Assembly (NCBI GenBank): GCA_051294905.1
Contig: CM119372.1
Location: forward strand, 36,828,001-36,892,000
Origin: Botryllus schlosseri
Taxonomy: Eukaryota
Length of the DNA: 64,000 nt
Direction of reading: 5' to 3'
Position 1 is the first letter of the stretch; the number at the start of each line of letters is the position of its first letter. Shown in pieces: positions 17,970-40,039 of the stretch. A model generated the notes under the pieces. It saw only the letters and a list, made by a program, of their open reading frames with translations, was not told the origin of the DNA and made no database searches. Made by a program: the position numbers and the translations under genes.

Positions 17970-18370
17970 CTGCAAGGAATTTTATACGTACAAAGTAAGA
18001 ATTGCATTAAACTACACTGCATAAAAGATATCAATATTCTGAATTCGAGGAAACAGGGAAAGAGCCTACGACTAAACAGATGCCACAAAGTTTTAGATAT
18101 GATTTTGAAGTAAAAGTGATACGGTGTTGCTGTTTGTTGCATTCATGGTGTTTGTGAACTACTATGGTTATTTACGGTAGGCCAATCTTCGTCACTTTTA
18201 TTCCGTATCTGCCGCTTGTAATACCTCCCACCTCTGGCTTTTCTATGATACCGATTACTCGGATGAGATGGCGAGAAGGTGCCTAGATATACCTCCATCA
18301 CTCGAGTAGGAATATGGAGTGGACCTTGATCGGACGCGCAAGCCATTGGTGTTTCAGCTGTGGTTTATAC

Positions 18371-18837
18371 CAGTGGTTCTCAACCTCAGACTGACTACCA
18401 TAAAATAGGGTTACCATACGTCCTCTTCTAAGAGGATTTGTCCGGCTCTGGCGGGTATTTCGGAGTGAAAAACGGCGATTTGAGCTCTGAGCGAAAAGTT
18501 GACCTTTTATTTAGTCAACCTATCACATAGTTGGAACAATTGACCGATTTTTGAGAATTCTTCTCCGGTTTTGCAAGTCTCAAATTTCTGAAAAAGTGTC
18601 CTCTTTTTAGAATTCCAAAATATGGTAAGCCTACCATAAAATCACCCTGATGCCATCATGAAGATAAATAATTACGATCAAAACCCTCGAAACGTCACTC
18701 CCTAGCACCATATAATTGCAGAAAACGGTTGCATACTGTACATTTTGGCTTCATTTCAACTTTGAAATTTCACCGGTCCGCCAGACATTTTTTGAAATTT
18801 TACCGGTCCGCGAGGTGAAAAAGGTTGAGAACCACTG
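18371..18837. mobile_element. Charlie-like MITE (cagtggttctcaacc TIR) with a nested Blackjack-like MITE
   Basis: cagtggttctcaacc at 18371 and ggttgagaaccactg ending at 18837, with an internal tagggttaccata...tatggtaagccta element. Confidence 0.8.
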
Positions 18838-19757
18838 GGTTAGAGCACTAAATATTTGTATACCGGAGTCAGAGGTAAAACATTTTAGTTTTTGCCGAGC
18901 ATGACGCCGGGATTTAAGATTCTAATTGAAGTAGGTCTTATGACAGAACGTGAAAACAGACACTCGGTCAAGGGAAGGCCAAGGCAAATTTCAAATAAAA
19001 AATGCAAGTTACGCTTAGCGTTAGGGCTATATAGGCTGCACACTGCTCGAAAAGAAGCGACCAAGACAATAAGCTTTGTAGGCCTACTATCCCCTATTCC
19101 TTTCAGTACAGTGGTTCTCGAACCGGGGAGAAGCATTCGAAGGAGGCGCGAAACCGAGATTGAATGAACATTTTTTCGGGCATTGCGCGATTTACGCCCA
19201 GCTCATTGCTGTTCCTCTGTGTATTGTCCGACTTAGATATTTGAGAATACTCTCATTAACAGCCATCACTATCCATGCCATCAAACTATCCGTTGGGATT
19301 GTTAGCATCCTCGTTGCTCTTGATAATAATTTGTGACATCATGAACGTGGATACGGGTTTAAAGAGAGCCGAAAATGTATCATGTTTAACATTGTTTTCA
19401 ATCATGGCGTCGAATAGATTTTGTTTAATTAACCGCAAGTTTCTCTTTACCTAACATCAACACATTCACTGAGCTGCATTTAATAGCAATGTAATTTATA
19501 AATAAAATCAAAATGAGCCGAAGAATAAAGTTAAAAATTTTACCAGGCCCGCCAGCATATTTTAGAGTTCTCATCTCGCCCTCGGCGAAAAATAATTACC
19601 CATTCTTGCCATAGGGCGTTCTCAGCTTATCGAGGTGTCTTACATAGTAAGCCCATCAGTAACCGTGCCAAGCAATAAGTTTTTGCAACCTTCATCTCGC
19701 CAGTGACAATATCATTTTCCAACAAATTATATCTCCGGTGCAATAATATGTGCTAGC

Positions 19758-20082
19758 CAGTGGTTCTCAACCTTTTTTTAGATACACCCCCCTTTTTCAT
19801 AGTGAAAAATTTCGCGCCCCCTTATCGTCATATCACAAAATCCAACTGGGATGTTAACAACCCCTACAGATTGTTTGGTGGTATGGACGGTTATGAATGT
19901 TGATGAGAGAATAAAAATATATGAAATTGGGTATATATAGAGAGAAACGCGTGTGCATTGCAGGTAAATCGCGCCGAGCGCGAAAATTTTTTCAGGTGAC
20001 CGCTTCTTCGCGCCCCTTCAGATGCTTCACGCCCCCCCCCCCCCCCCCCAAGGGAGCGCGCCCCCCAGGTTGAGAACCCCTG
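19758..20082. mobile_element. Charlie-like MITE
   Basis: cagtggttctcaacc / ggttgagaacccctg, with a near-matching TSD tgctag(a)c. Confidence 0.8.
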
Positions 20083-20438
20083 TGCTAGACGGTTATTAAC
20101 AGGGATGTGGAGTCGGCGGAGGAGTCGGAGTTTGGCCAATTTTCGCTTGATTGAGTCGGAGTAGGAGTCGTGAAAACTGAAGTGGCTTGAGTCGGAGACG
20201 GAGTAATGGAAAAAATACTGACTGGAGTCGCAGTTGGTGAAAATGACCCTGACTTCGACACCGACTCCAACTTCTTTATCGTGAAAACAATTGCTTTCAA
20301 AGGTATCTTTAAATTACTAATATATTAACTATAATAGGATTTTTATGTACCATCAATCACTGGTATTAGAAACGATATAGATCGGGGGCGGCCAAGCCGT
20401 GCCCCGCAGGTCAAATGTGGCACCAAAGGGGATCACAG

Positions 20439-20720
20439 CATAGTGTCCTATATGGTGTCGACACAGGCAAATCTCACGCCTCAGTGAAATTGTATCACGT
20501 CACAATTTCCATTTGGCTACAGGCAATTTGACGGTCATTTTTGACCGGCTTGCCGAGCATTAAATTTGGTAAAACAGGCATCATTCGAAAGCTGACTCTG
20601 CACTGATTACGAAAATATAACTTTTATTCCGCTCGTGGCCCTGGAACTCCAACAATTAGCTTCGAATTTTTCATTGTTATGGATATTGGCATTGGGACGC
20701 AACAATGCTGTCTGGCGAAA
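20439..20720. repeat. MITE fragment of the catagtgtcctatatggtg-TIR family
   Basis: Highly similar to 56680-56960. A copy with both TIRs lies at 36100-36758 and another end starts near 63943. Confidence 0.8.
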
Positions 20721-22769
20721 AGAGAGTGTAGCTCAAGGAAAAAAGAGCCAGACAGCAATGTTCAGCAGTAGTAGTGGAAATAGGTGAAATATATCGAAAT
20801 CGCACCACTGTACCATAAACAATTTCGAAATCCGATAAGTCATCGTGCTCTGTCTAGCTATAAACTTGAAATTCATGGCCCTGAAACACATTGGCTGTAA
20901 GATTCCTCTATATTTAGAAAGTTGAACTTAAATCCCCTGCAGCAATACAGTTCTAGCTGTTATGCGTAAAAGGCTACGAATTATAGTTCTCACCATTCAC
21001 AACGCTTGTTGTCGTTTCTTCGCTAGTAGAGGTCACGATTGTTGCTTTAGTCGCAATTGAATCTGCTATATATAAAATCGGTAATATATAGCCAAAACAC
21101 AGTTGACTCCCCTTAATTCGAACACTGGTTTCGTTTAACTTAGTGCAAATTAAGCGGAAATTCAATTATTCAATAATATCAATGAATATCAAAAATATGC
21201 TCAAATGTAGTTGTCGTCTCCAAGTAGAGACTTATGAAGAATGTGATTGGAGTGGGCTGACTCTGAATCTCCTCTCTCAACTGGCACGAAACAAGAACTC
21301 CAAATGGACGAATATCTTATTAAAATACCGTTGAAAAATTGCTGGTAATATCCTGGTAAGACCAAATACTCCAGTAAATAAAACAATAAATGAACAGACC
21401 AACAACAACGAAACAAAGCTGGCTACTCTCACCACGTCGCTCACGTAAATGAACACACGTGCGCTCCAAAGTAGTTTAAGTGGCGAGTGAGCCATAAAGA
21501 AAATAATATCCACCGTGACAGTAGTTGAAATCAGCCTATACTCCGTTGAGCGCTACTTCTGAGTTTGAATTTGGTGAGCTTTTTTGAATACGAGATAGGT
21601 TTCATCTTCAAAAATCGTCTTCTCAGAATTCCTACAGATTCCGTCAGAATTCATACAGACTCCGTCAATTTCTCGCACCCCCACGGAGCCGCGCCCCCAG
21701 GCTGAGAACCCCTGCTTTAAATAGATAGGGGACTGTAGCTTATTTCGTATCTTCGCCGGAAGAGCTTAAGTCGCCTTAAGATTTGGCAGTAGAATTGTTA
21801 CCAGGCGCAAGAGGCTACACTTGGGCAGAACACTTATCTTCCTCCCACCTCTTTACCTTCGCTGTCGCCTCCACGCCACAGCGTATTTTGTAATTGTTGT
21901 CATACATCTTGCCTGTATACTCGGAACTGCTTATGACAGTGGTTCTCAACCTTTTCGTCTTCGCGGACCCATTTTCGACGAACGCGGAACCCCGCGGGCC
22001 CCCCACAAAAATTTTGATCAAATTTAGCTCAATTATCGTGCAATCATCATTTATCTTGTGCAAGTAATAACAACAGGCTCAGTGATAAACGGCGAAAATG
22101 ACTTTTCTTGAAAATGAAATCATACTATTCATATGTACATTGGGTTGCATTCCATTATTTAAAAGCGAATTCTGCAACTGCATTTCTTGAAATACATGGT
22201 CGTATCTTGAAAATCCGCGCCTTCGATTTGATATGAACGAGTGCCCAGAATCCATTCCCACAATTATTGGTGGTGGTGGCGAATGTAATGATAACGCGTA
22301 ACGCTTCCGGAGACACATTTGGGTATGATCACAACAAATATGGCACCAGAATTGACGAACAATTTTTTTCAATAAGCATGTAACGTTTATAGCCTGCTCA
22401 TTACTATCTAGCAGCAGTTATTATGGGAAAATGGTATGTATACCACGGGAAAATGGATTTATGTAAACATTTCGAAGTCAACGTGACTTTTTTCTCCAAT
22501 CCTCAACAAAACATCTCTAAACTGCAAAATGTTTGTATCAGTAGTCTAATGGCGATTCAGCAATTAGAATGAGTCTACACAGTAGGATATTTCATCTCAG
22601 ACGGCCATTCTGCTGACGTGAGCTCTGGAGTTTTATTAGTAATGAAGAGAAACCACCTCGTGATTTTCCGAATTGAGAATATCTATTCGGCTATCAACTA
22701 TTTTGAGGCTTCGCGGACCCCTGAGGGTCCGCGGACCTCCGGTTGAGAACCACTGGATTACGATCTTCG

Positions 22770-23340
22770 CTTTACATCGAGACCCTCCGCTCAGCAAAGC
22801 CTATATACTACATACACCCTCTACCAGGAGCGACACAAAACTACAAGAATTTCAGTCTTCTGCAACTATAGCTGCATAAGCCTAGAAAACCCTCTAGCCT
22901 CAAGCTACAGACATATAGACAAACACTGTATAATACTAACCTAAGTCACCTTCACCAATGCTACGAAACCGACCTACTCAAAGCTGAAGCAGCTAATACA
23001 CAAAAATGTATAGACCCGCTTACCTAGGACGGCGGCGATCAATTGACGCAATGGTTTCCTAAGAAATAGCGACTGCAGACGTCTTCTCAGCTGCCGTTGA
23101 CTGTGATAAGATATTGCAGCTGAAAAGTGAAATACATTCGTTATACCAGATCCGACCAAACATGTAGGGGAGATGTGGTACCGATGGATCATAAATTGCA
23201 AAATGATATCTGGCCCTCAAATCTTCAGCCGAGAATAGCAGATCTTTTGCAGTCTCAACACTGCGATACAAGCTCTACCTATCGCGGACATTTATATGAA
23301 CATCCGCCTTTTCAAAACATATTTATAAACGTTTAAAATT
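22770..23340 (+). pseudogene. 3' fragment of a Tx1/L1-type LINE ORF2 (decayed)
   Basis: Degenerate RLPRTAA...RNGFLRNSDCRR and IPDPTKHVGEMWYRWII, resembling the zinc-binding C-terminus. Stops and frameshifts are present. Confidence 0.5.
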
Positions 23341-24169
23341 TGTTGCTCGAACGTGTCATCGGTACCTACCCGGTGGGTCCAAAGGCACACAGCCATGGGA
23401 CCTATGAAACATACGCTCAGAAATTAAAATTTGTTAACCTGTTTTGTTGTGGACTATAAGCTAAGCTACAGCAAGCCAATGAAGAATGTTTCGTTGCCAC
23501 TTTCAAGAATAAAATCAATTATATCAACTCAAAATGTTGGCAGAAAATCACGCTTTGATTTACGCCAATACTTACAAAATTAATGTCACATACATATTAC
23601 CCCCAAATCGACATTTTGATATTCAAATACCTCGGTATAGCGATAAAACACCGCAGGTAACTATGATTTACAGCCTATATATATGTAGGCGGGTTTCTGT
23701 TGTTAAGTGATTAGTTGGTCCATCTATTTTGCTTGATTTGGCTATGGTGCCATAGGTCCCCCACCTCGTAAATATTATAATTGAATTGAAAATAGCCCCC
23801 TCGAGGATGATTGACGATGATATTGATTTAAAAAATATGTGCCATTGATTTAAAAAATATGTGCCATTATATACCCTGATACAAGCCCAATACTTCACAT
23901 CAAAAATTATGGCGGACTTGTTAGTCTGAAAGGTGATATAGAAAAATGCAAATGTCGATCCAAATTTACTTTACACCCCCTAAAACGTAAATCATTCGTC
24001 ACAGACCCCATAACTCACGCAGGTCGAAATTTTTTTCATGTGAGGAAAGATTCTGCCAGCATGTAATTGTAGGCAAATTCACGGAGTCTAATCATGGAAT
24101 TATCATGGAGAATTTTTCAAGTATTTTCGGTCCCAGTGATCCATCGGTACCACATCTCCCCTACATTAT

Positions 24170-27100
24170 ACAACCTCATGATGAGAGATAAAGAGAGGGT
24201 AAAGCAAACAAAAAAGAGCTCCTTGAGGATCTCAAATATGGCATACGGACTGAACAAGCCAGGATACTGTTCTAAGAGGCACAAGAACCCTACAAGAGCA
24301 AGTGCCAATAGAAGCAGTGCCAATAGAAGCAACTAATGCCGAGGTTGCAGATGCGGTTCAGAGATATACCTGTGGACAAGTGATCAACATACTTAAAACA
24401 AACCTCCGGGTATCCAAAATCCATAATGGGTACAGACAGATCATGATAAAAAACTATCGCTCTATGGAAAACTACCTTCACACGTTTCTATCAGTAAAAT
24501 CCAATGTAAGATTTTTCTCCCAACGGGAGAATGCATACCGCACTGTTACAAATGTCTTCAAACAGGGCACTCCACCAGACAATGCCAGAGTGTTACTGTC
24601 TTCATTGAATGCAAGGAGCCAGGACATCACAGGGAAGACTGCCCACAACTAAGGCAAGATTACCCGACAATCCGGTAGACATCAGAAGAATTGAAGAAAA
24701 TAATACTGATAACACGTAAACGTAGACAAAAATAAAGAAAAAAACAGTTAACATCCGGCTGCAGATGAACGAATTAAAGAAACTAATGAAGATGACTTCC
24801 GGGTAAGAGGACACGTAAACGTAGACGAAAATAAAGAAGAAAACATTGAACATGTGACTGCAGATGAACAAGACAATGATGAGGCTGTAAACGGAGTCGA
24901 AAACGAACTCCAGCAATGTAGTTGGGTTCATAGGCGCCTACTTTTATTTTTGAATGGGGTGGCGGCAGGCGCGTAGACGGGGGGGGGGGTGTCGAAACCC
25001 TCTCCTTTTGAAACGCAGAACACCGTCTTTTCGAAATGACCATTCCCATTCCGATACTTATATTCAGTTGCAATTCAACAAGTCGTATTATCAGTGTTAC
25101 GCGCGGCCGCGACCAATTAGCGAGATTCTTCTGTGCACGCAGGTCGCACAATGTAACGAGATGCGATCTCCAGCTGAGATGATTGCGAAATTAGGTTATT
25201 GATTGCTGCGCACTCGACATTCGTCGCTGGACTGCCCAGTAACACGGCGTGACAATTCTGGAACAGGAAAGACAGACAAGAATGATGATTACAAACGCGC
25301 GCGACCTATATCAGTATTTATCCCTTACCGCCAACACGATGGGTTTTTACTCAGTATTGAGTAGCTCGAATCGCGACAATTGGTTGCTGATTAAAACATC
25401 GATTTTGACTGCATCGCTGCATTTCCCGATTTACGACGTCGTAAACGAGGTTGCTTCGTTTGTCTGATTACTAATCACCGATTACAATTTATTGGGGCGT
25501 TTTAAGCACTAGTTCGTCGCCGCCCACGAACCTGCGTATTCAATTGTTCGCGCGCGTATCGGTTAATGGTAAATAATTGGCATTTACGCGCTATCACGGA
25601 CTCCCTAATTGACAGCGCTGATGATTTGAAATCGCAGAAGGCGGGCGTTTAATCTTAGGGAATGCAAACTTACATTATGGGCACATAGAAACAATTACAG
25701 CATATTCAAAAACTTTTTATACTATTCAGAGAAGAAAGAAACAGAAAACTTTACTTCCATGGCAGAACGATTATAATTTAGACAAACCTAACAACGGAAT
25801 ATTCGAACGACCACAACATAACTATACCAAATGGAGCCCAAAAACTTGCGCTGAACTCGAAAGACCACAAAGAGTCCCTAACAATCCTGAACATCTATGC
25901 GCCGCAATCAAGTTGGAAAACACAAGATGATTTCTTCCGACATCTTACTGTGGGAATAAGACAAAATGGCAGCCCTATCATACCGGGTGATGTCAACATG
26001 ATCATGGATAAGATAGACTGTGAAAGGCAAACTACCTTTATAGTAACCGAAGCCGCAGAGATATGGATTATTAAAATTAAACAACAAGAAAATGGTAGAT
26101 ATCTACAGATGGCGTCATCCCTTTACAAATATCTTTATGAAGACGAGCGCTTTCAACTCGCGCCGCATAGACATAATCTATGTTACGAAAGATCTAGCCA
26201 TGATGACGACGGCCGCATGCTATGAAATCAACGGCTTCTCAGACTATAAGTACTATGCAACAATTAGAATTAAACCAAAGATATCAGAGAAATGGGGGGA
26301 AGGGACGTGGAACAACAACGCGTCTCACCACAACAACACCAAATACCTACTAGAAAAACTATACGAGGAATTTAGCTTTAGAAATTTAGAATGCCCCGGC
26401 ACATGATGTTGGTTGGTCGACCTTAAAAAGAAACTAAAGAAGATCTCTATAACATACGGAATAGAAGTGAAAAGGAAGCAGAGCGAAATCCAAGGGAGCC
26501 CAAAATGTAAATTAAACTCTCAAAATATAAATCCAGAGTAGAGGGCCCAAATGACTCGAAAGCTAATGGATATAGAAAAGGAGAAACTCGACTGTCTCGT
26601 GAGATTCAATTTTAAACAGATACTCGAGGAGAATGGAAAACCTTCACACTAATTCTACGCCAAACTCAAAAACAGGAAAATGAGAAAAAAATACACGATT
26701 GGAAGACAAAGCTGTTCATGTTATGGAAGACAGAAAGGAAATTATAGACAGTATTCAGGAATTCTATGAATACCTATAGAGCGACAAAAATGTTGGTGAA
26801 GAAAATCTCCAACAACAAATAAATGAATCCATAGTAAATACCCTAGCACCTGATAAAGGGGAACTGCAGGATAGCCCTATTTCAGAATCGGAATTAGAAA
26901 TAGCAATCAAAACTTTACATACATACAAGACGCACAAGACACTGGGTTCAGATGGTATATTAATCGAGTTTTACAAAACCTTCTTCTATCCAGTTAAAAA
27001 CGACATGCTACAGCTTTACAACAATGTAGCCTATTACTGTTCGGCAACACTGCTCATTCGTGAAGTGAATTAATAGTAAGTCTCATATATAAGAAAGGGG

Positions 27101-28110
27101 ATCCCGAAGAAATAAAGAACTGGAGACCCATATCCCTGACAACCGTTGATTATAAGATCCTTACATAGATTCTAGTAAATAGGATGAAAACTGATCTCAA
27201 TGACGTCATTTTGCCGCCCCAACAGTGTGCGGTAGAAAAGAGACAGATGTCTGAGATATTGAAAAACATCGAGGCCGTGATATTTACAGTAATGAAAAGA
27301 AAACACTTTTAATATTAGCAAACGTTGATCAGGTGAAGGCTTTTGACAGAGACCCCCACTAATTTCTCTTTGAGATCACGAGAAAACTTAATTTTGGAAA
27401 GAGATCGAGAGAACTTATTCAAAAAATACACCAAAGTCCCTTAAGTAAGGATGACATTAATGGTAACTACACCGAAGATATTCGCCTTAGAAGAGGACTC
27501 TGCCATGGCTGCCCCCTAAGTAGGCCTATGTGCCTTAACGCATTCACAGCTGAACCCTTTACGCAAATGATCCTAAGAAATGAAAAGATAAAAACTTTAA
27601 AGTCGGACAGTTCCAACTTAAGATATTACAATGCGCACATGACTTGACGATCCTCATCACCGACTTGGAACGTATGAGGAATTTACATGCTTTGAAAAAG
27701 CTAAATAACTAACTAAATAAACAAAAAACTAAAATACTCAGCCTTCACTACAAAGCCTAATCGACGAGCAAGAATAAACTACAGGAAAATATCAAGACGA
27801 CCATCAAAATATTGGGACAGTACTTCGGTGAAGAGCAAATAAAAACAACAAGGCGGGGCTACCAGGAAAATAGAAAACGCACTCTATGGCAACAATCATC
27901 GTTAACTTACCTGGAATGGTAAAAACACAATCATAAACTCGACGATATCGATTCTAATTAGCTATAATGCGAGATCCACCCCCCTTTATTGGAGACAACT
28001 GTCAAGATAACAAAACCAGTCCTTCAATATTTATGGAGTTCGGAAAAAATTGAAATAATAAAAAGAAACAATTTTATGAGTGAAACACAAGAAGGTTCAA
28101 TTGATACACA
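24170..28110 (+). mobile_element. Decayed Tx1/L1-clade LINE (ORF1 + ORF2), interrupted at about 24920-25680
   Basis: ORF1: VPIEATNAEVADAV...NGYRQI with knuckles CYKCLQTGHSTRQC and CKEPGHHREDCP. EN: LNIYAP, PGDVN, RRIDIIY. RT: GSDGILIEFYKTF, KKGDPEEIKNWRPISL, DQVKAFD, GCPL. Many stops. Confidence 0.9.
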
Positions 28111-29478
28111 GCACGTTCCTAGTAAGATCAAAGGCATGACATCGGCATCGAGTTAAGTCATGACTCGAGTCATCCCAACACTGGTATGTAAGTTGAGGGA
28201 TCGATTCAATTTAGGATGAGCGTCCTTTTTGGTGTTACATCGGGTTACCATGAGATGCGAAAAAGAGGACTCTCAAAAACCCTGACAGCTGTAATACGCC
28301 CGGAAAAGACAAACTGGGTAAATTCTAAAGTTTTGGAATCATTGTACCAGGTCCACACTTAGACTCGACCTCCGTTTTACTCGAATTATTTCGAAACTCT
28401 TTCATTCACTGCGTCGCAGTCGAGTTTCTGATGGTATCTTCATCAGACATTGGGTGATTACTTCATGAATGTAATCGATTGCGATTACGATTACTTACAA
28501 ATGACGCGATTACGATTACGATTACAGCAAAATCAGGAAGTAGTCGATTACGATTACGATTGCATTGGAAAAGTAATCACGATTACTCACGATTACATTT
28601 ATTTTGCATCTTAGAGGTGATATTGGAAGACAATATATGGATTGCGCTGAAAAGGCCTAATGAGATAACAAACTTCATTTAAAAAGGATGCGTCATTTGC
28701 TTGTTGCGTCATAATGGAACCTACCTCTTGCCCATTTTTATATAGGACGATCAATTGCACCCAACGATTTGCATTCTTGCCAGGTCCTTGACTGCCGCAC
28801 CCCAAATTTCCCAATAGGGTGAGGAGCGAGATCGAAGATGACTCAAAGTATTTCGTAGACCAACATAAATTATTGAGTATTTTCGAGAGATTAAATTGAC
28901 TTGAAAATTCTCTCTAGATAAGCTTGATTTTGAAATGCATACGTCTTCCCCTCAACAAAAAAACATGGCCTACATTATTTATAGTAGGGCTGCATTTAAA
29001 ACAAATGGTTGTTTAAAACACTTTGTTGTGTAAATACTTTTCAAATAACATGTTGAATGAGCCTATATGGACAGTAACCACCTGATTTAGCCGACGTACA
29101 TCGATATGGGATGGTTGAAACCCTCAAAATAGTCGGTTCAACAGTTAAACGACAGATATTTCATCAAAGGAGCTATATTTACCCTATATTTTTTAACGTC
29201 AATGTCAATACACATTCGTGACGACATGGCTCAAAAAACATGATTCAAACATGTTTACTTTAAATTGATTTTTGTTTTAAATGCAACCCTACTTTATAGG
29301 AATAGGAATTTAGGTTCCAGTCAATACCGTGCCACGACACGCCAAAAGACATATGCGACTTCACGAAGTGTGCTACTAAAGAAAGACCTTGGTTGAAACT
29401 TAGGGTTTGTGTCCATTGCCAATAGCCGCGCTGGGTGGGCGTGAATAATAGTCCACGGTCCTTCCAATGTGAGCCCAC

Positions 29479-30390
29479 GATTACCAGTGAACCCAGTCCT
29501 CGGTGAACCCAGCCTTACAAACTCGGCCCTCGGTGAACTCGGACCTCGGTGAACTCGGCCCTCGGGATCTTTTGTTATCAAGTGTATTAACAAGTATTAT
29601 TATGAATTATTAAACTAACAATGTTATTATCAACTGATTTGTCGATCTTGTAAGGAGGTCAGGGCATGCGTAGATCACGCAGTCACGGCGTGATCAGATC
29701 ACGGATTGCCCAAGCGCCAGGCGCGGGAAAGAACGCGACGTTCACATATCGATCAGACCTCAGTGAACTCAGCCTTACAAACTCGGCCCTCGCCGAACTT
29801 GGACCTCGGTGAACCCGGCCCTCGGTCAATTCCACCCTCGGGAAATTTTGTATTCACCGGCAACCCTAATATCCCCCTTCCCTAACCCTAATATCCCACC
29901 TCCGGCAACCCTAATATCCCACCTCCGGCAACCCTAATATCCCACCTCCGGCAACCCTAATATCTCCCCTCCCCCAACCCTAATATCCCACCTCCACCAA
30001 CCCTAATCTCCCACCTCCGGCAACCCTAATATCCCACCTCCGGCAACCCTAATATCCCCCCTCCCCCAACCCTAATATCCCACCTCCACCAACCCTAATC
30101 TCCCACCTCCACCAACCCTAATATCCCACCTCCACCAACCCTAATATCCCAGCTCCCAGCATTAATTCAAGATTGTTCGGGGGCGGAATTCACCGAGGTC
30201 CATAGTATTCGAGAAACACCACGAATACCACAAAACAAAAAAGTAGAGTATGTGAGCATCGCGTTATCTCCCCCACTTACTCAATCCGTGAATACAAAAT
30301 TTCCCGAGGGCTGAGTTCACCGAGGTCTGAGTTCACCGAGGGCCGAGTTTGTAAGGCTGGGTTCACCGAGGGCTGGGTTCACCGGCAACC
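29479..30390. mobile_element. Foldback-type non-autonomous element, 912 bp
   Basis: ~90-bp TIRs built from 15-bp ctcggtgaac-type subrepeats, perfect 8-bp TSD gagcccac, and an internal extra copy of the left TIR (~29761-29860). Confidence 0.9.
29861..30160. repeat. 23-bp minisatellite (caaccctaatatcccacctccgg), 13 copies
   Basis: The AACCCTAAT core recurs at 29862, 29884, 29907 and every 23 bp through 30137. Confidence 0.95.
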
Positions 30391-32614
30391 GAGCCCACAA
30401 TGAAAATGTTTCTTTTAGTCTACTACGTTTGGGATACAACAATATCTTTTGATGATATCACAGACCGGAGGTCACGAATTAACAACATACATTAAAGTAA
30501 AACAGGATACCAGACACTATAATTATGAAATACGTGCCCCCAGCTCTACAGGTAAATCTGAACATCGGGGTAGAGTAAGGATTAAAAATTAATAATAATA
30601 AAATGCGATTACCAATATTACTGACGAAACTCAGACTTCAACTTGAAAATATCACCCCATGAGGGCCAAAGACCAACGTTTGGACTGGAGGAAGAGTTGC
30701 TGTTTTGGCCCTGAGTCTAGCTACAACCTCCGCTAACATGATATATATTATATAAGCCCATGGCTATGACGGCAGGTCCCGATGTTGAGTAAAGAATTGT
30801 GAAATGAGGATTGGCGCCCGTTTCAAGAAGAGTCATGTGAGAATAAGATTCTAATTCGTAAAATTCTGCATTCAACTTAATACAGATAATGCACTGCAAT
30901 CTGCCGTTACGAGAAACGGCAAAAACGGCTCGGTTATGATGCAGCTGTTGATTTTCAACGCTTCGTTGTGGAAACCGTAATGTTTTATTTGACGAGTACA
31001 AAATTTCAAATCTTTGTCCGGTGTACGTACGTACTAGATAGGCCTACCGCTCGCCAAGCAGAATCGGTCAAACTGCGTTTAACTATAAGCATAACCAAAC
31101 ATCAATACACAAGTTACTATTTTAAACTAGGCAGAGTGGTGATTAATTATCCTGCTGCGAGGTACTGGCGTGTGAAACGTTTTGTTAACCTGATATACAG
31201 TACGGCGGGTGTTCTTACGATCACACTAATGTACGTACATCGGATATATCTATTTGCTGTGGATACTTCTTACGCAATGACCAGCAAAGCTAATAGGCTA
31301 CTTCTGACGTAATAATGAGCAATGGCATTTGAAAATCAGACGTTTGTGCTATTACGAGCCTGGTATAATATCTCTTCATTGTTCACGAATGTTCAGTTTA
31401 TGTAATAGTCCTAGTGCAAATAAGAAGCACTCGTTCTTTCACAAAGAAATCGATTATATATGGGAAGTATAGTCGATTACGATTACGATTACTTCGGAAT
31501 TTTTTCGAATGTAATCGATTGTGATTACGATTACTTGAAAATGCTGTAATCGTCGTAATCGATTACGATTACTAATCGCGATTACCCCATGTCTGATCTT
31601 CATACTTTTTCTAGATAAAGTGGACAAATTCTCAAAAAAGAGAACATTTAGGCCTCCTCCGAGAACACGTTCTGTTCACTAAAACTGAGGACAAACCGTC
31701 TTAAAACAGGGCGTATGGTAACCCTAGTGTTACATTTTGGTTAGGTTTAGGGTGGGAATTGTGTCAAGCCATGATTGGGGTCAAGTTAGGGTTCGGACTA
31801 ACCTTAGGACAGAATATGAGTTATTAGTATATAGGCTCATTGTTCGGAATAATCCCTTTCTCAATAAAGCTTAGCACAACGACATACCTTTACTCAAATA
31901 ATCAACTTACAAATGTAATAATTTGAGATTATTGTAGAGTACTGAAGCTATTCGCCGCTTTCCAACAACAATAATCCAATTTATTTGTAGCTACAACTAT
32001 TATTTCGATGTTTTTTTTTCTCAGCACAGAAGCCTTTAAAACCTCGATAAGTATCAAGGCATCCACAACGTAGAGTACGAGGCTTTGTATGTAGGTGAAA
32101 ACGACAGTTCGATGAAACCTTGATCCATCCATAGCATTATCACAAAATGCAATTGAATGCTTACCATCAAAAATACCAACTTATCATCAATTGGTGTAGA
32201 ATTGGCATTGCGTTCTTTAATATTTGTGGCCGCATGAAATGTACAAATCTGAATTTATCGCGTAATCCATATTTCTATAGCCACGTATTACGCGATACTA
32301 GACTAGAATCGGACGAAGCTTCATTCTCGATCACGAATCGACTCACTTACGCACTCGATTTTGCCAATCCGAAATATTTTGGGTATTTACCCAATACATT
32401 GATTAACAAAGTCAATTGAATGACAATTCCGCCTATCCTCAGATTATTGCTATTGGAAATGGTAACTTACTAAAGTCAGGTGAGGAAAATTTAGTGTAGT
32501 TCCCTAAGTTTATTTATTGTATCAAGTGAAAAGATTACAAAATTGTGATAACATAAAAAGATAGGAAGTAATTAAAACAACTTAAAGAAGCCTTGCAATC
32601 AACCGTCCGTCCTG

Positions 32615-35600
32615 TCAGCGCACCAGATTGAATATAATGGAAGGCAACATGAAACGAACTAAAATAGACAAACGTGAAAATGAAGTGGCGATTACGAATT
32701 TAATATAAGCCTGAAAATATCAAGGATTTTGAATACAGAATGTTCATAACTCGCCTGCTGGTCCCGATTGATCTTTTCTTCTCAATAAATCGATTTCAGT
32801 ATTGCCTTGAAATATTGTTAATTAACTGCTCATTTGATGCTTATTTGGTAGTCACAAACATGTATATCACCTGATCTTATGTTATGGAATTTTACCACAT
32901 TCCTTTCGACCTGTATGTCGACTTGGTCGACCACCCAGAAAACTTCCATATTCCCAGCCTTAATAAGAATATCAATATTTGTTATTATTCTGCAACATAT
33001 GCAATGTTGTTGCATATTTCATAAGCCTCAGACGTAACTAGATAGCATGCATGCAGTTATAACTGACGAGAGAGAGAGAAAGAGAGATATCAGTTTCATT
33101 CGCACCATCCAGATGCTTTGGCGAAATAGATGCGATGCAAGCGATAGGATGAGGGATATCCAGTTAGCAAGATCAAATCGTTTTTTTTTTCTTTCCATAT
33201 TGTATCTAGAAATGGTGAACACCTAGCGGGGAAGCTGCGGAAACCAGTTTTGCATTCAATTCTTTGGTCCCAGCCGACCGGCTAATGATGGTGCACGTGT
33301 CCTTCCGACTGACACAATATCTCCATCTCGATAGCAAAGATAGACTCTAAATTAATTCCAGTAATAAAAATTATGGTTGTGCATGAATTTGAGTGTTATT
33401 TTTATGTATTCTATCGATTGTTCTGCCAATAAGAATGATTTTTTGTCAAACTTATTTCACTTAAAACTCACACAAGGAGTTGAGGAGAGTCGTATTTAAA
33501 AGAGAGAGTAATTAAAAATCAACATGTTAAAAAGATGGCCCTCGTTCAAAACAGGTTCTATTGCGTCATTTTTCATTATTCCGTCACGATGTCGTTATTT
33601 TAGATTGTCACGTCACATTGCCATGTGGCTCTTCAAGAATTACAATTGAAAATTGTCAATATGGCTCCTTTGACAAAAAAGATTTCAGACCGCTGTCTCA
33701 CACGGACATGATAATCATAACATCCATACAGTGCCAGTGATATGCAATTGCTGCTAAACCGACGACGGCTGCGAGAGCTTCAATTAAATTGTGTGTGTCG
33801 ACTATATCTACTAATGCAAGTAGCGCAACGGCTCGTACTGCATTTTTTTGAAGGTATTTACACAATTTTGACGTGATTAAGCGGCTATTCGAAAGGAACA
33901 TATGCATGCTTAATATATGGTGCATTATCCAAATGAAATAACCAATTTAGTCCACTAATAATTAGCATTATGTAAATATTGCAGCAAACAATACATTCGT
34001 ATTGTCAAATTTATTCCACTGGAAGCATTTCGACTAGCTCTCTTCAGCAGTGAACGCCAGTAAATGAGGTTAACCAAGTTCGAAATTTAGATATAATTTT
34101 TTCGTTGTGTCGTAATAATGACAAGTAAACAGAGTCGCGAACGGCAGTAAACAGTGCACGGCTACGGTACAGCACACACAAAATCAGCTGTAAAACAGTC
34201 GAATAACAACACATGAACACAACACTAACGGAAGATTCCCAGCGTGTAGAGATGTTCCTTCTGGCGACAAATTTTTTCTATATTTCGAACTTGGTTAACC
34301 TCATTTACTGTCGTTCACTGCCGAAGAGAGCCAGACGAAAAGCTTCCAGTGGAATGAATTTGGCAATATGAACGTCTTGTTTACTGCAATATTGAAGTTC
34401 TGTACTTCGAAAAGCCTATTATATCAATATAAACCAGGATGCATATTCCTACAGCAAGAAAAATAAGCAGCTCATCTGGTATTCTTCACCTCGATTGTTT
34501 TGTCAAAAACATTGCCCGATTTGAGTGGACGTCTCACTGTTACAGTCGTATGAGTCGCGTTTTCAAAGCCGTCCAAGATATCAACATTCTGCTCTGCGTC
34601 AACGAATAAATGTCCAGTTCTCGTTGTATAACAGTCCTGTAAATTATACACATTTCAATGAAACCGCCGTGTACATCATTCTGCATAAAAAGTAAAGGCT
34701 AAGCCTTCCGATTTCTAACAAACAGAGCCTGACTTGCTTAGAGTTTTTGGGCGGAAAACGATAAAACCAATAACATGCACTTTCAATGCTAACCACGATA
34801 TCGAAAAGAACATGACATCTAGCTTATAGAGACATTTCCAAAAAATTAAAATATTTATGTCAATAGCTTTACAGGCACGCCACGCTTCGACAAGAAACGA
34901 CCTAGAAATGATAAATCTTGACCGCTGGAAGTTGTCGTGACTAGTATTGAAATAATTCTACTGTTCGGAGTATTCAATTAGTGTTCATCAGTTTACACCA
35001 ATTACCCAAGTGGTATGATTGTAGATGTGTACTTCCAGTTCTTGGGCGAGCAATCCGGACCTTTTTACTTAGTTGGAATAGAATACTTTCATTTGAGTAT
35101 AAATTGGCGGTTTTCCTTCTACTCTACCTGAGTGCCAACAATACCTTATTTGACCCTCAGTGACTCACACCACCTCCGACTTCAATTAATATATGATTAT
35201 TCCCATCCAAGCATTCGCATATTAGAGTTTTCTGACCCCGTACTACCATGTTAGGAAGTCATTAAAAGTCCCGATACGTTTTTCCACTAAAGGTCGTTAT
35301 CCTGATTAGACCTAACAGAATTTTAAATTACTGTCCTATAGTGACGCACATAAACATACTCCATTCCGTTTCGCACCCCTCCGACTATGAAATCGACACC
35401 TGTAACTGCGCGAGTTGGTGCAAAACCGATTCCAATCCATCCTTTCGTTTCTCCAATCATCTGAATTTGAAAAGAGGTGAGGTAAAATCGATATTCCATA
35501 GATCAGGGGCGGGCAACATACGGCCCGCGGGCCGGATCCGGCCGGCGGACAGTTTTCCGTCTTATATGATAATGTGGCCTGCGGCTACCGAGATACCCCG

Positions 35601-38600
35601 CTACTTGCTTACTACGTCAAATTTTAGTGACTGTATGTCATTCGTATGCGCAGCGTGCGAGTGGAGCTTGCACGTAAGTTCGTCGAAGCGAGAAGACTTG
35701 CATTATCGGCATTTACGATGTACTCAACCCTAATATCGTTTGTGGTAATCATGGTGTTGGTAGACTACAATGGTCATTTACACCAGACCGATATTTCTAA
35801 TTTTTGATTCCGTAACCGCCGACTTGTAGCACGGCACACTTGTAGGCTTTTGTAAGACACCGCTTTTGCCAGGGAACGCCAACTCAAAACGGGTCGCGGG
35901 CCACATTTCAAATTTCGTAGATGCCGCGGTCCGCATGAATTTAATATCGAGATAAAATAGGCCACACAGATGAACAACGACGTTATCTCATCACCTACTC
36001 ATCCTTAATGAATTGCTATATTGGTAAATTTGGGGTACGGGCTTATCGAGCACCTTGAAATATTAATTAGGGATTGCACTGTGAGTTGATTGAGCACAGC
36101 ATAGTTTCCTATAAGGTGTGTACACAAGCAAATCTCACGACTCAGTGAAATAGGTCTACGTCACACTTTCCCTTTGTTCAAAGGCAATTTGGCGGTAATT
36201 TTTGACCGGCTTGCCTAGCCTTAAAACTGATAAAACAGGTTTCAATCGAAAGCTACTGCGGTGCTGGTTGCGAAAATATAAATTCCATTCTGCTGGTGGT
36301 CCTGGAATCCCCCCAAATCAGCTTCGAATGTTGCATTGTAACGGAGTTTGGTATTGTGACGCAACTATGCCATCTGGGAGCAGGTGAGGAGCAGAGTCAA
36401 CCGCAAGCCATTATTGGCCATTGCTGCGCAACCGATTGAGCATTCACACTCTTACTCTCGTGCGCGCTTGCTCCTGAGCTGCTCAGACGGCATGGCTGCG
36501 TCACAATACCAAACTCCGTCACAATGCAACATTCAAGGCTGATTTTTGGGGTTCCAGAACCTCGAGCAGAATAGAATTCATATTTTCGCAACCAGCACCA
36601 CAGTAGCTTTCGATTGATACCCGTTTTATTAAATTTAATGCTCGGCAAGTCGGTCAGAACTACCGTCCAATTGCCTTTGACCAAATGGAAAGTGTGACGT
36701 AGACCAATTTCACTGAGCCGTGAGATTTGCCTCTTTCCACACCATATAGGACACTATGATCAGAGAGAAGCAGACATGGCAGCGCCTGTATGACAATGCT
36801 GTTCTCAAATCCTCATTATATCCTCGTCATTATCGATGAGAAATGGCTTTGAAGTGACATTACTATCGTTAAAATACATTCATTAAATACGATTTCTTCC
36901 TTGTGTATGTGGATAAATGGCGAATAATGTGTCGATTCAGCAATCCGGCCCGCCAAGTAGTTAATTTTCCTATATCCGGCCCGCCGACTGGAGAAGTTGC
37001 CCGCCCCTGCTGTAGATGCCTATCTGGAAAGCGAGAGAGTCTCGAATCGTGACATATCATACACATATCAACAATTTTTTTTACAATTATCTACTAGTTG
37101 TTGACGATCAACCCTGACGAGTGTCAGCCAAAAACATTCGGGTGCATTTCAATATGAATATATTTTTCAGTTACTGGAAATAGTTTTCTACCTTTTTATA
37201 CTTGATAAAAGTTGCAGTAAAAATGGAAAAATTGAAAAATGTTGCAATTGCATAATATATCAATTTTGAGCATTTAGAACAGTGATTCCCAAGTGCGGCC
37301 CCCAGATATCCTTCTTGTGGCCCCCAACATATATTAAGAAATCGATTAATGACAAAAATGAAATTTATATTTGTAAAATACTCTTGCTTGGCTTGACCTA
37401 TGTGGTTTTTAATTATAGAATTGCAGGAAAGTTGTGAATTGTGAGTATCGACTGCTAACGTTATGTTACTGCTGTTTCAATACAATGTGCCCCAACTTTC
37501 CAGTTGAACGAGCAGTAGCTATAGATATAAATAGGTATTGATAACTTTCAAAATCGGAGGAAAATCTCTCCCTCGTGGTCGCTTGACTAAAAAAGAAAGA
37601 GGCACAATTCCCGGAACATACAGTTTTTCTTTCACATTAACAGGTGGTTGACTGAGAAAAAACTTCCAGGTCCAGCTCCGAAATAGCCGCCGTCGCGTTC
37701 CTACAGTGCTGACTTAATGTATATCAGTCGAATTTGGCCCTATGTAACCAAAATCCTCAAAAAAGAAGACATTTGGGCGTCCTCCGAGGACACTTTAAAA
37801 AAATCAAAAAAGAGGACAAATCATCTTAAAAGAGGCCGTATGGTAACCCTATGATAACTAGATGTGCAACACGTGACTCACGGTTGAATACGCCGAGATG
37901 CATACTGCTTAGTCGGCTAAAAGCAGCATAATTGGTAGTCCTATATTCAGGGCCGTAACTGCCGCACCCCAAACCCCCCAATTGAGGGAGCCGAGCTCGA
38001 AGGGGCCCAAAATTATTTCGTGAATTGGAATAAATTATAGAGTCATTTTTAAAAATTTATGCAACTTCTTGAAAAAATTTAATTTTCGCGATTTCAATTC
38101 GCCGCATGTCTTGATTATTGGGTACTCTTCCCCAAGAAAAAATACGCAAGATTTATAGAAATGGGCATATCAGCGTTGGCCATGACCGCACCACAACGCA
38201 CCAAGACATTTAAAGTTTTAGGCCATGTAACATGTGACTCCAATAAGTGTGAACGATCGGCAGCGAGAAAGCCATGGCCGTAAAGGACTGCTTTTATGCT
38301 GACCAAAAACTTCGAAATACCAAAAACTTCGTTATATATGCAAAATACATATAGGTTTATTTGTCCATAGGCGCCTAAATGACTGGCGCAGAATGGTCTC
38401 GTCTTGGCAATCTGAACCCATCAAGATGAATACCATCCCGCAGGAAAGAAAATTACATGCCAGCGAAGAAATACCAATTGATCTGAAATCGTGTGATCTT
38501 CCAGTTTAGTAGGTTTGGGCAATTCTACATTTTTTGATATAGCAGACAGGATGTCACGGAATAACATCATGTGAAGAAATCATACCTAGGGGTCTGCCCG

Positions 38601-40039
38601 CCCGAAGATGTTTAATTTTATGGGGTCTGCAGTTTCAAAGACACTCAGCTCTACCGGTAAATTGGATTACGTGGGCAAAGACGACAACCACGCAATTCCC
38701 GATCTTATTCACCGAATTTATCATGAATTATCGAAATATTCGGGCGTCGCGCTGTCTCGATAAACAGTACAACTTTGATTTCGTGGCAAAAGCGAACAAC
38801 GTCATGCGGGGTCAGTTTATCACCCTATGGGAGCCCGGGGTCCTGACGAAGTGCCGTTACGTTCCTGCCAACAGGTACCCCCGGATATGTTTAATTCCTA
38901 TTGAGGGGGCAGATACCTTTACAAACACACCTCACTCAACTCTACCGGTAAATCACATTACGTGAACGGAGACCAGACGAAAATTGATAGCAATACATGC
39001 AACTCCCGATCATATTGACCGATTCAGTCATGAAACTAAAGAAATTTTTCGCGCTTCGTGCGTTTAGACGAGAAAAGCTGATTCACTCAACAGACACCCA
39101 ATGCAGCAGATAAGTAGCGGTAAACGGTGTACAGTTTCGAAACCTCGCCAGGGCAATAAAACTACTCCGAAATAGCCATTATGACTGTTTGGGTCCGTTT
39201 CAGAGCCGTAGTATTCGTGCGGCCCCGACCATACTCTGAAATTCTAAATTTGGCCCTCACACCGAAAAAGTTTGGGAACCACTGATTCAGAAGCTGCCGG
39301 AAGCCGTAAAAAGTTGCAGAAGTTACAAAAACCTCCCCAACCGATTACATGGCAAGACGTCGTCTACAAAATCCTGCCACATTTGGGAAGGAATTATGGA
39401 GTTGACCTCGGTAGGACTCCAACCTGCAACCTATTGGTGTTGCAGCTGTACATCATACCACTCCGCTATCTCCCCACCCCATTGTTGAAATAGGTGCTTT
39501 GATGCTATTACATTTATGAGCTGCATTCTAAATCACGTCAGAAATATCGGTCAAGCGACACAATCGTTAGTCACTATTAGAGGCCTATTGTTAACTAAAG
39601 CAAATTTCGCGAAAGTATTGATAATAAGACACCAGGAGATAAGAAGACCGAATTCCTACATTATAAATACACACATATGGCAAATGACAAGATGCTGTTA
39701 TAAGCTTCAGTGTCCACCGATTTCAATTACATAAAGTAATGTATCATGCGACTCTTGAAACAGATTTCTCCTAAGCTGCCTTTCACTGTTGCATAATTAT
39801 TTAACGGGCTGCATCTAGTCATTAGCTATATGTGTATAGATTTTCAAAATGTTCACTGACGATTCTATATAGTGAAAACGTTCACAATACGTTCATACCG
39901 TCATTTCGATTGAGTCTTTATCATATTTCCATTGTAATGAAAGTCGAGGGCTAAGTCGTTTAACATTCCAAACTTCATTACTAGCCGTTTCACCCCAGCA
40001 CGCAGGCACAGTCAGCAATACCGCTATCCAAACGTACAT
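32615..40039 (-). CDS. Signal peptide + DOMON-domain protein, MOXD1-derived paralog C lacking the catalytic domains (about 180-193 aa)
   Basis: Exons: 39899-40039 (MYVWIAVLLTVPACWG...IEMT), 35350-35460 (MIGETKGWIGIGFAPTRAVTGVDFIVGGV; 111 bp as in copies A/B), 34490-34636 (DCYTTRTGH...KTIE; 147 bp as in copy A), 32871-32958 (AGNMEVFWVV...KFHNIRSG), 32755-32805 (NTEIDLLRRKDQSGPA). A tentative last exon 32615-32658 (VRFMLPSIIFNLVR*) follows a GC donor. The first five exons are solid; the terminal exon is uncertain. Confidence 0.8.
33975..34393. mobile_element. MITE with ~130-bp TIRs in a paralog C intron
   Basis: aatattgcag...ttcgaaat is matched in inverted orientation at the right end. Confidence 0.8.
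36100..36758. mobile_element. MITE with long imperfect TIRs (catagt...actatg)
   Basis: Inverted similarity over >250 bp. No TSD was recognised. Confidence 0.75.

What the first reader, a model, noticed from the sequence alone, without database searches (positions are those of the whole stretch)
32615..40039. MOXD1 paralog reduced to a stand-alone secreted DOMON protein, or a swappable N-terminal module
Seen: five intact exons (signal peptide + DOMON) follow the phases of copies A and B, with matching or near-matching sizes. No HH, HYDNP, HxH or EMC exon could be found between 32600 and copy A. Every continuation stops within 15 codons: read-through gives GEL*, and the GC donor (AG|GCGAGT at 32754) gives either GLY* or VRFMLPSIIFNLVR*, the latter a GPI-signal-like tail with AATAAA ~100 bp downstream. 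The Met of the MNGAD motif is Val here (AVTGVD) while the His (KFH) is kept. Established: cytochrome-type DOMON domains ligate heme through a Met/His pair. Inference: a diverged DOMON-only ligand-binding or regulatory partner maintained beside the enzymes. Alternatively it is a variable N-terminal cassette, because its phase-1 GC donor is frame-compatible with the first catalytic exon of copy A (acceptor before 15022), like UGT1A or protocadherin variable exons.
Basis: partly seen in the sequence, partly recalled or inferred. Interest (0 to 1): 0.75.

Follow-up and report, generated by a model that had tools for sequence, protein, structure and literature searches.

The report
First-DOMON module of neighbouring MOXD1-like gene
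The five exons are real and transcribed, but they are the signal-peptide-plus-first-DOMON module of a tunicate family of two-DOMON copper monooxygenase genes (the rest of the gene is "copy A"), not a shrunken third enzyme copy; what these exons are spliced to today is still open.

Summary
The five minus-strand exons (signal peptide + DOMON, phase-1 GC donor) exist exactly as described, and no catalytic exon lies between them and copy A.

The framing is wrong, though. Copies A and B have no start codon or signal peptide of their own. Their first DOMON exon opens with a phase-1 acceptor, and every such gene in this tandem array has a copy-C-like unit just upstream.

In a domain tree, copy C groups with DOMON1 of two-DOMON DBH-like monooxygenases (Styela clava RefSeq; a 2,685-nt cDNA-like contig from a relative). 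A and B group with DOMON2. Copy C is therefore by descent the 5' module of gene A.

Two spliced RNA contigs join its exons as predicted and use the GC donor. None of the three proposed short endings is covered.

The exon after exon 5 lies outside 29.8-32.75 kb and is not A's first DOMON2 exon. A's first catalytic exon (15022) fits by phase and first base; an unknown 3' exon cannot be excluded.

Copy C evolves about four times faster than its sister and lost conserved motif residues, but its frame is kept by selection.

First readers of this scan noted double-DOMON genes 60-83 kb further along the same array.

The parts
39899..40039 (-). Copy C exon 1: ATG, hydrophobic leader (signal-peptide-like) and start of DOMON1; ends in phase 0, donor GTATGA
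   Evidence: X2 contig record 14 carries 134 nt upstream of e2 that do not lie on 29800-35700, consistent with e1-e2 splicing.
35350..35460 (-). Copy C exon 2 (111 nt), DOMON1; Val replaces the family's conserved Met (AVTGVD)
   Evidence: DOMON HMM hit at 35293-35490. Joined to e3 in X1 contig record 4.
34490..34636 (-). Copy C exon 3 (147 nt), DOMON1 core; the exon has the same size in all 11 units of the array that were checked
   Evidence: DOMON HMM hit at 34481-34654. Junctions e2-e3 and e3-e4 seen in X1.
32871..32958 (-). Copy C exon 4 (88 nt), ends in phase 1
   Evidence: e4-e5 junction seen in X1 and X2 contigs.
32755..32805 (-). Copy C exon 5 (51 nt), ends in phase 1
   Evidence: Covered over its full 51 nt in X1 and X2; the bin depths match exactly.
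32749..32754 (-). GC donor (GCGAGT) after exon 5. The sister units have GTAGGC and GTAAAT at the same place.
   Evidence: Both contigs stop matching the genome at 32755 and run on for 438 and 140 nt elsewhere.
17970..32754 (-). 14.8-kb spacer (ancestral intron between the DOMON1 and DOMON2 blocks). At least 7 kb is dispersed repeat copies. It holds no ORF above 122 aa and no exon homologous to relatives. The equivalent spacer is 3.4 kb and 1.2 kb in sister genes.
17839..17969 (-). Gene A, first DOMON2 exon (131 nt). Phase-1 acceptor cag|GTTCC, no start codon or leader. This is the ancestral partner of copy C exon 5.
   Evidence: Words of 17661-17969 are held by X1 (0.48) but not by X2.
16866..17771 (-). 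Gene A, remaining DOMON2 exons (17771-17661, 17393-17247, 17073-16983, 16913-16866). The block starts and ends in phase 1, with sizes 131/111/147/91/48 against copy C's 141/111/147/88/51.
14895..15022 (-). Gene A, first catalytic exon (128 nt). Phase-1 acceptor ttacag|CAAAG. Candidate direct partner of copy C exon 5.
842..14237 (-). Gene A, further catalytic exons (14237-14163 with HH; 13195-12994 with MHYDNP; about 12934-12772; about 12720-12617 with HSH; about 1193-1032; about 994-842 with SEMC). The last exon lies left of the window.

Best explanation
Copy C is the 5' module (start codon, signal peptide, DOMON1) of a gene that was ancestrally SP-DOMON1-DOMON2-Cu monooxygenase.

Shown:
- A five-exon DOMON block was duplicated inside the gene before this lineage split from Styela.
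- The whole two-block gene was then duplicated in tandem several times.
- The DOMON2 block has no start of its own.
- Copy C is transcribed, spliced as predicted, and leaves exon 5 through its GC donor.

Inferred:
- Copy C still supplies the start codon and leader for a transcription unit of about 41 kb that runs into gene A.
- The DOMON2 block is a phase 1-1 symmetric cassette. It is skipped in the transcripts sampled so far (join e5 to 15022, giving a one-DOMON enzyme) and included in others (giving the two-DOMON enzyme).
- DOMON1 in this copy is under relaxed constraint. It mainly has to stay in frame.
For: 1. The copy-C-like units C, D and E are all intact. They share exon sizes (x/111/147/88/51-54) and a phase-1 end. 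D and E have canonical GT donors where C has GC, and their read-through tails are not conserved.
2. In A, B and E the first DOMON2 exon is 131 nt, lacks ATG and leader, and opens with a phase-1 acceptor. Joining e5 to 17969 or to 15022 both keep the frame.
3. A copy-C-like unit sits upstream of each downstream gene in the array.
4. S. clava XP_039261999.2 (772 aa) carries 2 x DOMON + Cu2_monooxygen + Cu2_monoox_C. A Logan contig of 2,685 nt from a relative carries an uninterrupted 852-aa CDS with a C-type DOMON, then an A-type DOMON, then the catalytic domains.
5. In the tree, C/D/E group with DOMON1 of those proteins (support 96/91) and A/B with DOMON2 (100/95).
6. X1 contig record 4 (901 nt) joins e2-e3-e4-e5 at the predicted GT..AG sites and continues 438 nt off the stretch. 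X2 record 13 joins e4-e5 and continues 140 nt. Depth over 31770-32754 is zero.
7. Gene A is intact with all copper-ligand motifs. Its DOMON2 block is well constrained (A-B dN/dS 0.24; tree branch 0.14). It therefore needs an upstream leader exon, and none other was found in the spacer.
8. An open frame in C is unlikely under neutrality (0.4-2.5% of simulations).
Against: - The junction from e5 into gene A was never read.
- In both contigs the base after e5 is not G. The alignment stops at 32755 although genome base 32754 is G, and the aligner does extend through matching bases elsewhere. So the ancestral partner at 17969 (starts G) is not used in them.
- X2 holds the e4-e5 words but under 5% of the words of A's first two DOMON2 exons. 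X25, from the same study, shows the opposite pattern.
- If both isoforms were present in X1, a de Bruijn contig should break at the fork, yet record 4 runs 438 nt past e5.
- X1's contig keeps 65 nt of intron 1 up to a repeat boundary, so that transcript may not start at e1.
- Two deep raw RNA runs gave no reads on C exons.
Confidence: 0.5

Rival explanations
1. Gene fission. Copy C has been uncoupled from gene A. It is now a stand-alone gene for a secreted DOMON1-only protein, spliced from its GC donor to an unidentified 3' exon somewhere below 29800, possibly inside the repeat-filled spacer. Gene A uses an undetected leader exon of its own.
For: - The contigs leave e5 for sequence that is neither downstream read-through nor A's DOMON2 exon.
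- Within study P2, C words and A-DOMON2 words occur in different runs.
- Copy C has a long branch (0.65 against 0.14 for sister D), has lost conserved motif residues, has a mutated donor, and its spacer has swollen from 1-3 kb to 14.8 kb.
- DOMON-only proteins derived from DOMON1-like domains exist in S. clava, and DOMON-only hits cluster 0.8 Mb away in this genome.
Against: - No candidate 3' exon and no second leader exon was found.
- Gene A's DOMON2 block is strongly constrained yet has no start of its own. De novo gain of a leader exon in the right phase is rare.
- The word-share argument rests on a few low-depth contigs.
Confidence: 0.3
2. Ordinary constitutive two-DOMON gene. In functional mRNA e5 is always joined to 17969, and the two low-depth contigs are aberrant or noisy products.
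For: - The architecture is conserved in relatives and in all sister pairs.
- X1 holds 0.48 of the words of A's first two DOMON2 exons, against an exon-only maximum of about 0.65.
- Expression is very low (contig depths 7.5 and 2.9).
Against: - The next base after e5 is not G in both contigs.
- X2's contig runs 140 nt past e5, yet X2 holds none of the roughly 10 sampled words expected in that exon.
Confidence: 0.08
3. A DOMON-only protein that ends by read-through (GEL*) or through the nearby acceptors at 32710 or 32658, with polyadenylation near 32515.
For: The stops and an AATAAA are present in the sequence.
Against: - Depth is zero over 31770-32754 in all four runs, although e5 is fully covered in two of them.
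- X1's word share (0.18) equals the exons alone.
- The read-through tails are not conserved in D and E, which have canonical donors at this place.
Confidence: 0.03
4. Decaying relic. DOMON1 of this copy is on its way to loss, and its transcripts have no function beyond noise.
For: - Amino-acid change is fastest in C (C-branch dN about 0.20 against 0.06 for D, derived).
- Motifs conserved in every other unit are altered: M(A/N)GAD, NGPP, LWA.G.
- Expression is low.
Against: - All five exons are open and all splice sites are usable.
- dN/dS is 0.4-0.5, not 1.
- Only 0.4-2.5% of neutral simulations keep the frame open.
- The exons are spliced precisely.
Confidence: 0.07

Closest known systems
Two-DOMON DBH-like monooxygenase protein 1 homologs of Styela clava (XP_039261999.2, 772 aa; a second gene, 790 aa) and the 852-aa product of a Logan cDNA-like contig (SRR32906210)
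   Same: - Architecture: signal peptide, DOMON1, short linker, DOMON2, Cu2_monooxygen, Cu2_monoox_C.
- Copy C groups with their DOMON1, and copies A and B with their DOMON2.
   Different: - Here DOMON1 lies 14.8 kb upstream of DOMON2 behind a GC donor and evolves about four times faster than its sister.
- The only transcripts seen do not continue into the first DOMON2 exon.
Vertebrate and amphioxus MOXD1 / DBH (single DOMON + catalytic core)
   Same: - Same DOMON family (PF03351) and same catalytic domains in gene A.
- The copper-ligand motifs HH, H, HxH and M are present.
   Different: - Those enzymes have one DOMON. In the tree their DOMONs fall outside the tunicate DOMON1+DOMON2 clade.
- In human DBH the DOMON has no heme ligands and its function is unknown (PMC4846438).
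Annotated stand-alone DOMON-only proteins (S. clava LOC120338411, 332 aa, 2 DOMONs; LOC120338410, 535 aa, 3 DOMONs; Portunus trituberculatus XP_045129349.1, 214 aa)
   Same: - They are made of a leader plus MOXD1-type DOMON domain(s), with no catalytic domains matched.
- The S. clava ones are nearest to the DOMON1 clade.
   Different: For copy C no stop or poly(A) after the DOMON is seen in RNA. Its exon 5 ends in a used splice donor.
Variable first-exon loci (UGT1A, clustered protocadherins)
   Same: A 5' module with its own start could be joined to downstream catalytic exons while intervening exons are skipped.
   Different: Those loci have many alternative cassettes sharing one constant region. 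Here each DOMON1 unit has its own private downstream gene.
Cytochrome-type DOMON (cellobiose dehydrogenase cytochrome domain, PF16010)
   Same: Same beta-sandwich superfamily. The PF16010 model weakly matches some tunicate and amphioxus relatives.
   Different: Heme binding was not tested for any member.

Membership tests
Two-DOMON MOXD1/DBH-like monooxygenase gene (tunicate clade) | N-terminal exon with a start codon and a signal-peptide-like leader | tested here: met
   e1 begins with ATG followed by a hydrophobic stretch and a small-residue site. Units D and E have homologous leaders. This was judged by inspection; no predictor was run.
Two-DOMON MOXD1/DBH-like monooxygenase gene (tunicate clade) | The first DOMON is orthologous to DOMON1 of known two-DOMON proteins | tested here: met
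   ML tree: C, D and E group with DOMON1 of the S. clava and Logan proteins, support 96/91.
Two-DOMON MOXD1/DBH-like monooxygenase gene (tunicate clade) | A DOMON2 block lies downstream on the same strand, without its own start, in compatible phase | tested here: met
   A's exon 17969-17839 has a phase-1 acceptor and no ATG or leader. The e5 donor is in phase 1.
Two-DOMON MOXD1/DBH-like monooxygenase gene (tunicate clade) | DOMON1 and DOMON2 are present in one mature mRNA | tested here: not met
   In the two contigs that cross e5, the next base is not G and X2 lacks the DOMON2 exon words. Other tissues and isoforms were not tested, so this is not conclusive for the gene as a whole.
Two-DOMON MOXD1/DBH-like monooxygenase gene (tunicate clade) | Catalytic core with six copper ligands | tested here: met
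   Gene A shows NVHH, MHYDNP, HSH and SEMC motifs in open exons, with Cu2_monooxygen and Cu2_monoox_C HMM hits.
Stand-alone secreted DOMON-only protein | Stop codon and poly(A) shortly after the DOMON in mature mRNA | tested here: not met
   There is no RNA coverage of the three proposed endings, and the contigs splice away at 32755. A stop in an unidentified exon cannot be excluded.
Stand-alone secreted DOMON-only protein | The neighbouring enzyme gene is self-sufficient (has its own start and leader) | tested here: not met
   No start or leader in A's or B's first exon, and no homologous or conserved exon in the spacers.
Variable 5' cassette locus (UGT1A / protocadherin type) | Several alternative cassettes share one set of constant exons | tested here: not met
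   DOMON1 units and downstream genes are paired one-to-one along 254 kb.
Cytochrome-type (heme b) DOMON | Met and His axial ligands | tested here: not met
Copy C has Val at the motif Met, which is kept in D, E, A and B. A His (KFH) is present. Human DBH DOMON has no heme ligands (PMC4846438).
Processed or decayed pseudogene | Stops, frameshifts, lost splice sites, dN/dS near 1 | tested here: not met
   The frame is open and all sites are usable. dN/dS is 0.38-0.51. Only 0.4-2.5% of neutral simulations keep the frame.

The most novel reading that the evidence does not exclude
Copy C is a gene fission caught in progress. The DOMON1 module of a two-DOMON copper monooxygenase has been separated from its enzyme by a repeat-swollen intron. 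It now makes its own fast-evolving secreted DOMON protein through a newly captured 3' exon. This would show how the nearby DOMON-only gene cluster arose.
Probability: 0.3. Interest if true: 0.55.

Novelty: new member of a known kind. Interest (0 to 1): 0.35.

Why it matters
- Annotation: "copy A" and "copy B" are not complete genes. Each needs the upstream DOMON1 unit for its start codon and leader, so the locus holds two long genes rather than three.
- The two-DOMON MOXD1-like family is present in tunicate gene predictions, but two full-text searches of the paper library found no description of it.
- Copy C is fast-evolving, and its transcripts seem to omit DOMON2. It could be a natural test of whether these enzymes work with one DOMON, two, or with a DOMON detached from the enzyme.

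Tried and rejected
- Three homolog searches and one representative search to find this genome's own transcript-derived proteins. These found only relatives; records of the window's own genome appear to be withheld.
- A conserved extra exon (leader or linker) between the DOMON1 and DOMON2 blocks. tblastx between the spacers found only repeat-like matches with stops. tblastn with relatives found nothing.
- A Ser/Thr/Pro-rich linker exon, like the one implied by the relative's longer linker. The only candidate (about 20100-20320) is a simple GACTCC-type repeat with no usable donor. Sister spacers have none.
- Explaining where the contigs end by 31-mers shared with paralogs. None are shared, so this gave no test.
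- Raw RNA runs X10 and X14 (about 2 and 1.5 billion letters read) gave no reads on copy C exons, only on repeats.
- Reading X6/X7 and X26-29 as RNA. Their word shares match the fraction of the genome their contigs cover, so they are probably low-coverage DNA and were not used.
- The loose-end letters at 32755 were not among those listed.
Full report
**What is there**

On the minus strand there are five open exons at 40039-39899, 35460-35350, 34636-34490, 32958-32871 and 32805-32755. All acceptors are AG. Donors are GT, except CAG|GCGAGT after exon 5, where the frame is in phase 1. The product is a leader plus one DOMON domain. Read-through would add EL and a stop, giving 182 aa.

Six-frame HMM scans of the whole genome put DOMON hits on exons 2 and 3. 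Catalytic-domain hits fall only inside copies A and B, with none between 18000 and 32700. tblastn with full-length relatives also finds nothing in that interval.

**What the neighbours are**

The window lies in a tandem array on contig C2. Searching copy C's protein against 254 kb around the window showed two kinds of DOMON unit:
- a copy-C kind, with its own ATG and leader;
- a kind that belongs to the catalytic genes.

A copy-C-like unit sits upstream of each catalytic gene.

The first DOMON exon of copies A, B and the next gene is 131 nt. It has no initiator Met or leader, and it opens with a phase-1 acceptor: cag|GTTCC in A and B, cag|CCTCC in the next gene. The copy-C-like units C, D and E share exon sizes (111, 147, 88, 51-54 nt) and all end in phase 1. 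D and E have canonical donors (CAG|GTAGGC, CAG|GTAAAT) exactly where C has GC, and their read-through tails are unrelated. The second block has exon sizes 131/111/147/91/48 and also starts and ends in phase 1.

So "copy A" and "copy B" are not complete genes. By structure each is the 3' part of a gene whose 5' part is the upstream copy-C-like unit.

**Relatives**

A profile of exon 3 found multi-DOMON proteins of Styela clava as the closest database proteins. One of them, XP_039261999.2 (772 aa), has two DOMONs followed by Cu2_monooxygen and Cu2_monoox_C.

A Logan contig of 2,685 nt (SRR32906210) carries an uninterrupted 852-aa CDS with a C-type DOMON, a linker, an A-type DOMON and the catalytic domains. 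It is 60-86% identical to exons of this array and matches nowhere in this genome at more than 81% identity, so it is an mRNA of a related species.

In a maximum-likelihood tree of DOMON domains:
- C, D and E group with DOMON1 of these proteins (support 96/91);
- A and B group with DOMON2 (support 100/95);
- the single-DOMON enzymes fall outside both groups.

The internal duplication of the five-exon block is therefore older than the split from Styela. Copy C is orthologous to DOMON1, not a truncated third paralog. First readers of this scan reached the same view for genes 60-83 kb beyond this window. I reached it independently and tested it with the tree.

**RNA evidence**

Two older runs of the same species hold spliced contigs.
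- X1 record 4 (901 nt) joins exons 2, 3, 4 and 5 at exactly the predicted GT..AG sites.
- X2 record 13 (266 nt) joins exons 4 and 5.
- X2 record 14 carries 134 nt upstream of exon 2 that do not lie on the stretch, as expected if exon 1 is spliced on.

Depth is zero from 31770 to 32754 in all four runs. The bin depths show exon 5 covered over its full 51 nt and nothing beyond. The contigs run on for 438 and 140 nt that do not lie anywhere in 29800-32754. So the GC donor is used, and none of the three proposed endings (GEL*, GLY*, VRFML...*) is seen.

Two deep raw-read runs gave no reads on these exons, so expression is low or restricted.

**Which exon follows exon 5**

I could not read this directly. 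Two indirect results argue against the ancestral partner at 17969.

1. The aligner extends pieces through matching bases: record 14 reaches 35461, and each internal piece reaches one G into its donor. Yet the exon-5 piece stops at 32755, although genome base 32754 is G. The next base in both contigs is therefore not G. The exon at 17969 starts with G. The first catalytic exon at 15022 starts with C and is phase-compatible.
2. X2's contig runs 140 nt past exon 5, yet X2 holds under 5% of the sampled words of 17661-17969. About ten words would be expected if that exon followed. X1 holds 0.48 and X25 holds 0.33.

Either the DOMON2 block is skipped in these transcripts, or exon 5 joins an unidentified exon below 29800.

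**Against a fully independent gene**

- No other leader exon and no conserved coding block lies in the spacers.
- No linker-type exon could be found.
- Gene A is intact, with all copper-ligand motifs present.
- Its DOMON2 block is well constrained: A-B dN/dS is 0.24 and its tree branch is 0.14. A start-less block that is this constrained implies that it is still translated behind a leader.

**State of copy C itself**

Pairwise dN/dS is 0.51 (C-D), 0.38 (C-E) and 0.28 (D-E). Most amino-acid change lies on C's branch, whose tree length is 0.65 against 0.14 for D. C alone has altered motifs that every other unit keeps: M(A/N)GAD to VTGVD, NGPP to TGHL, and LWA.G to FWVVD.

Only 0.4-2.5% of neutral simulations keep the frame open over the divergence on C's branch. 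The frame is therefore maintained.

The spacer to gene A is 14.8 kb, against 3.4 and 1.2 kb in sister genes. At least 7 kb of it is dispersed repeat copies.

**Verdict**

Most likely (about 0.5), copy C is still the 5' module of one long transcription unit with gene A, and the DOMON2 block is used as an optional phase 1-1 cassette.

The main rival (about 0.3) is that C has been uncoupled and makes a DOMON1-only protein through an unknown 3' exon.

Stand-alone DOMON-only proteins and two-DOMON enzymes are both already present in gene annotations. Either way this is a new member of a known kind, with an unusual and testable splicing question attached.

Noticed in passing
G000:C2:37,660,000-37,815,000 (about 0.8 Mb beyond the window): About two dozen DOMON HMM hits lie there with almost no catalytic-domain hits, including a near full-length single-frame DOMON at 37722302-37722679. 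This is probably a cluster of DOMON-only genes, like the multi-DOMON proteins annotated in S. clava.
   Followed up: no
window numbering 209778-206662 (L015/L016 region, G000:C2:37,034,600-37,037,800): A copy-C-like unit about 90% identical in exon 3 to the unit at 190313-185012. No exon 4/5 is recognisable and no DOMON2 or catalytic exons follow within the 16 kb downstream. It is probably a partial duplicate.
   Followed up: partly
window 28431-31603: A dispersed repeat of about 2.3 kb, interrupted by a 0.9-kb insertion at 29477-30391. It has dozens of genomic copies at 87-95% identity and very high word depth in RNA contigs (up to about 12,000 in X1). It looks like an active or recently active element.
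   Followed up: partly
window 35461-35525: X1's spliced contig keeps the last 65 nt of intron 1 up to the edge of a highly expressed repeat (35513-35700) instead of exon 1. Some transcripts may start in that repeat and would lack the leader.
   Followed up: no
window 1194-12616: Gene A has an intron of about 11.4 kb between the HSH exon and the next catalytic exon. In copy B the same intron is about 1.2 kb.
   Followed up: no
G000:C2:31,837,785-31,892,669 (+): Another locus with C-type DOMON hits, then A-type DOMON hits, then catalytic hits in order on the plus strand. This is a further two-DOMON gene outside the array.
   Followed up: no
window numbering 230109-230421 (+), G000:C2:37,058,091-37,058,418: A DOMON unit on the opposite strand at the far end of the array. 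Exons 2 and 3 are separated by a very short intron.
   Followed up: no
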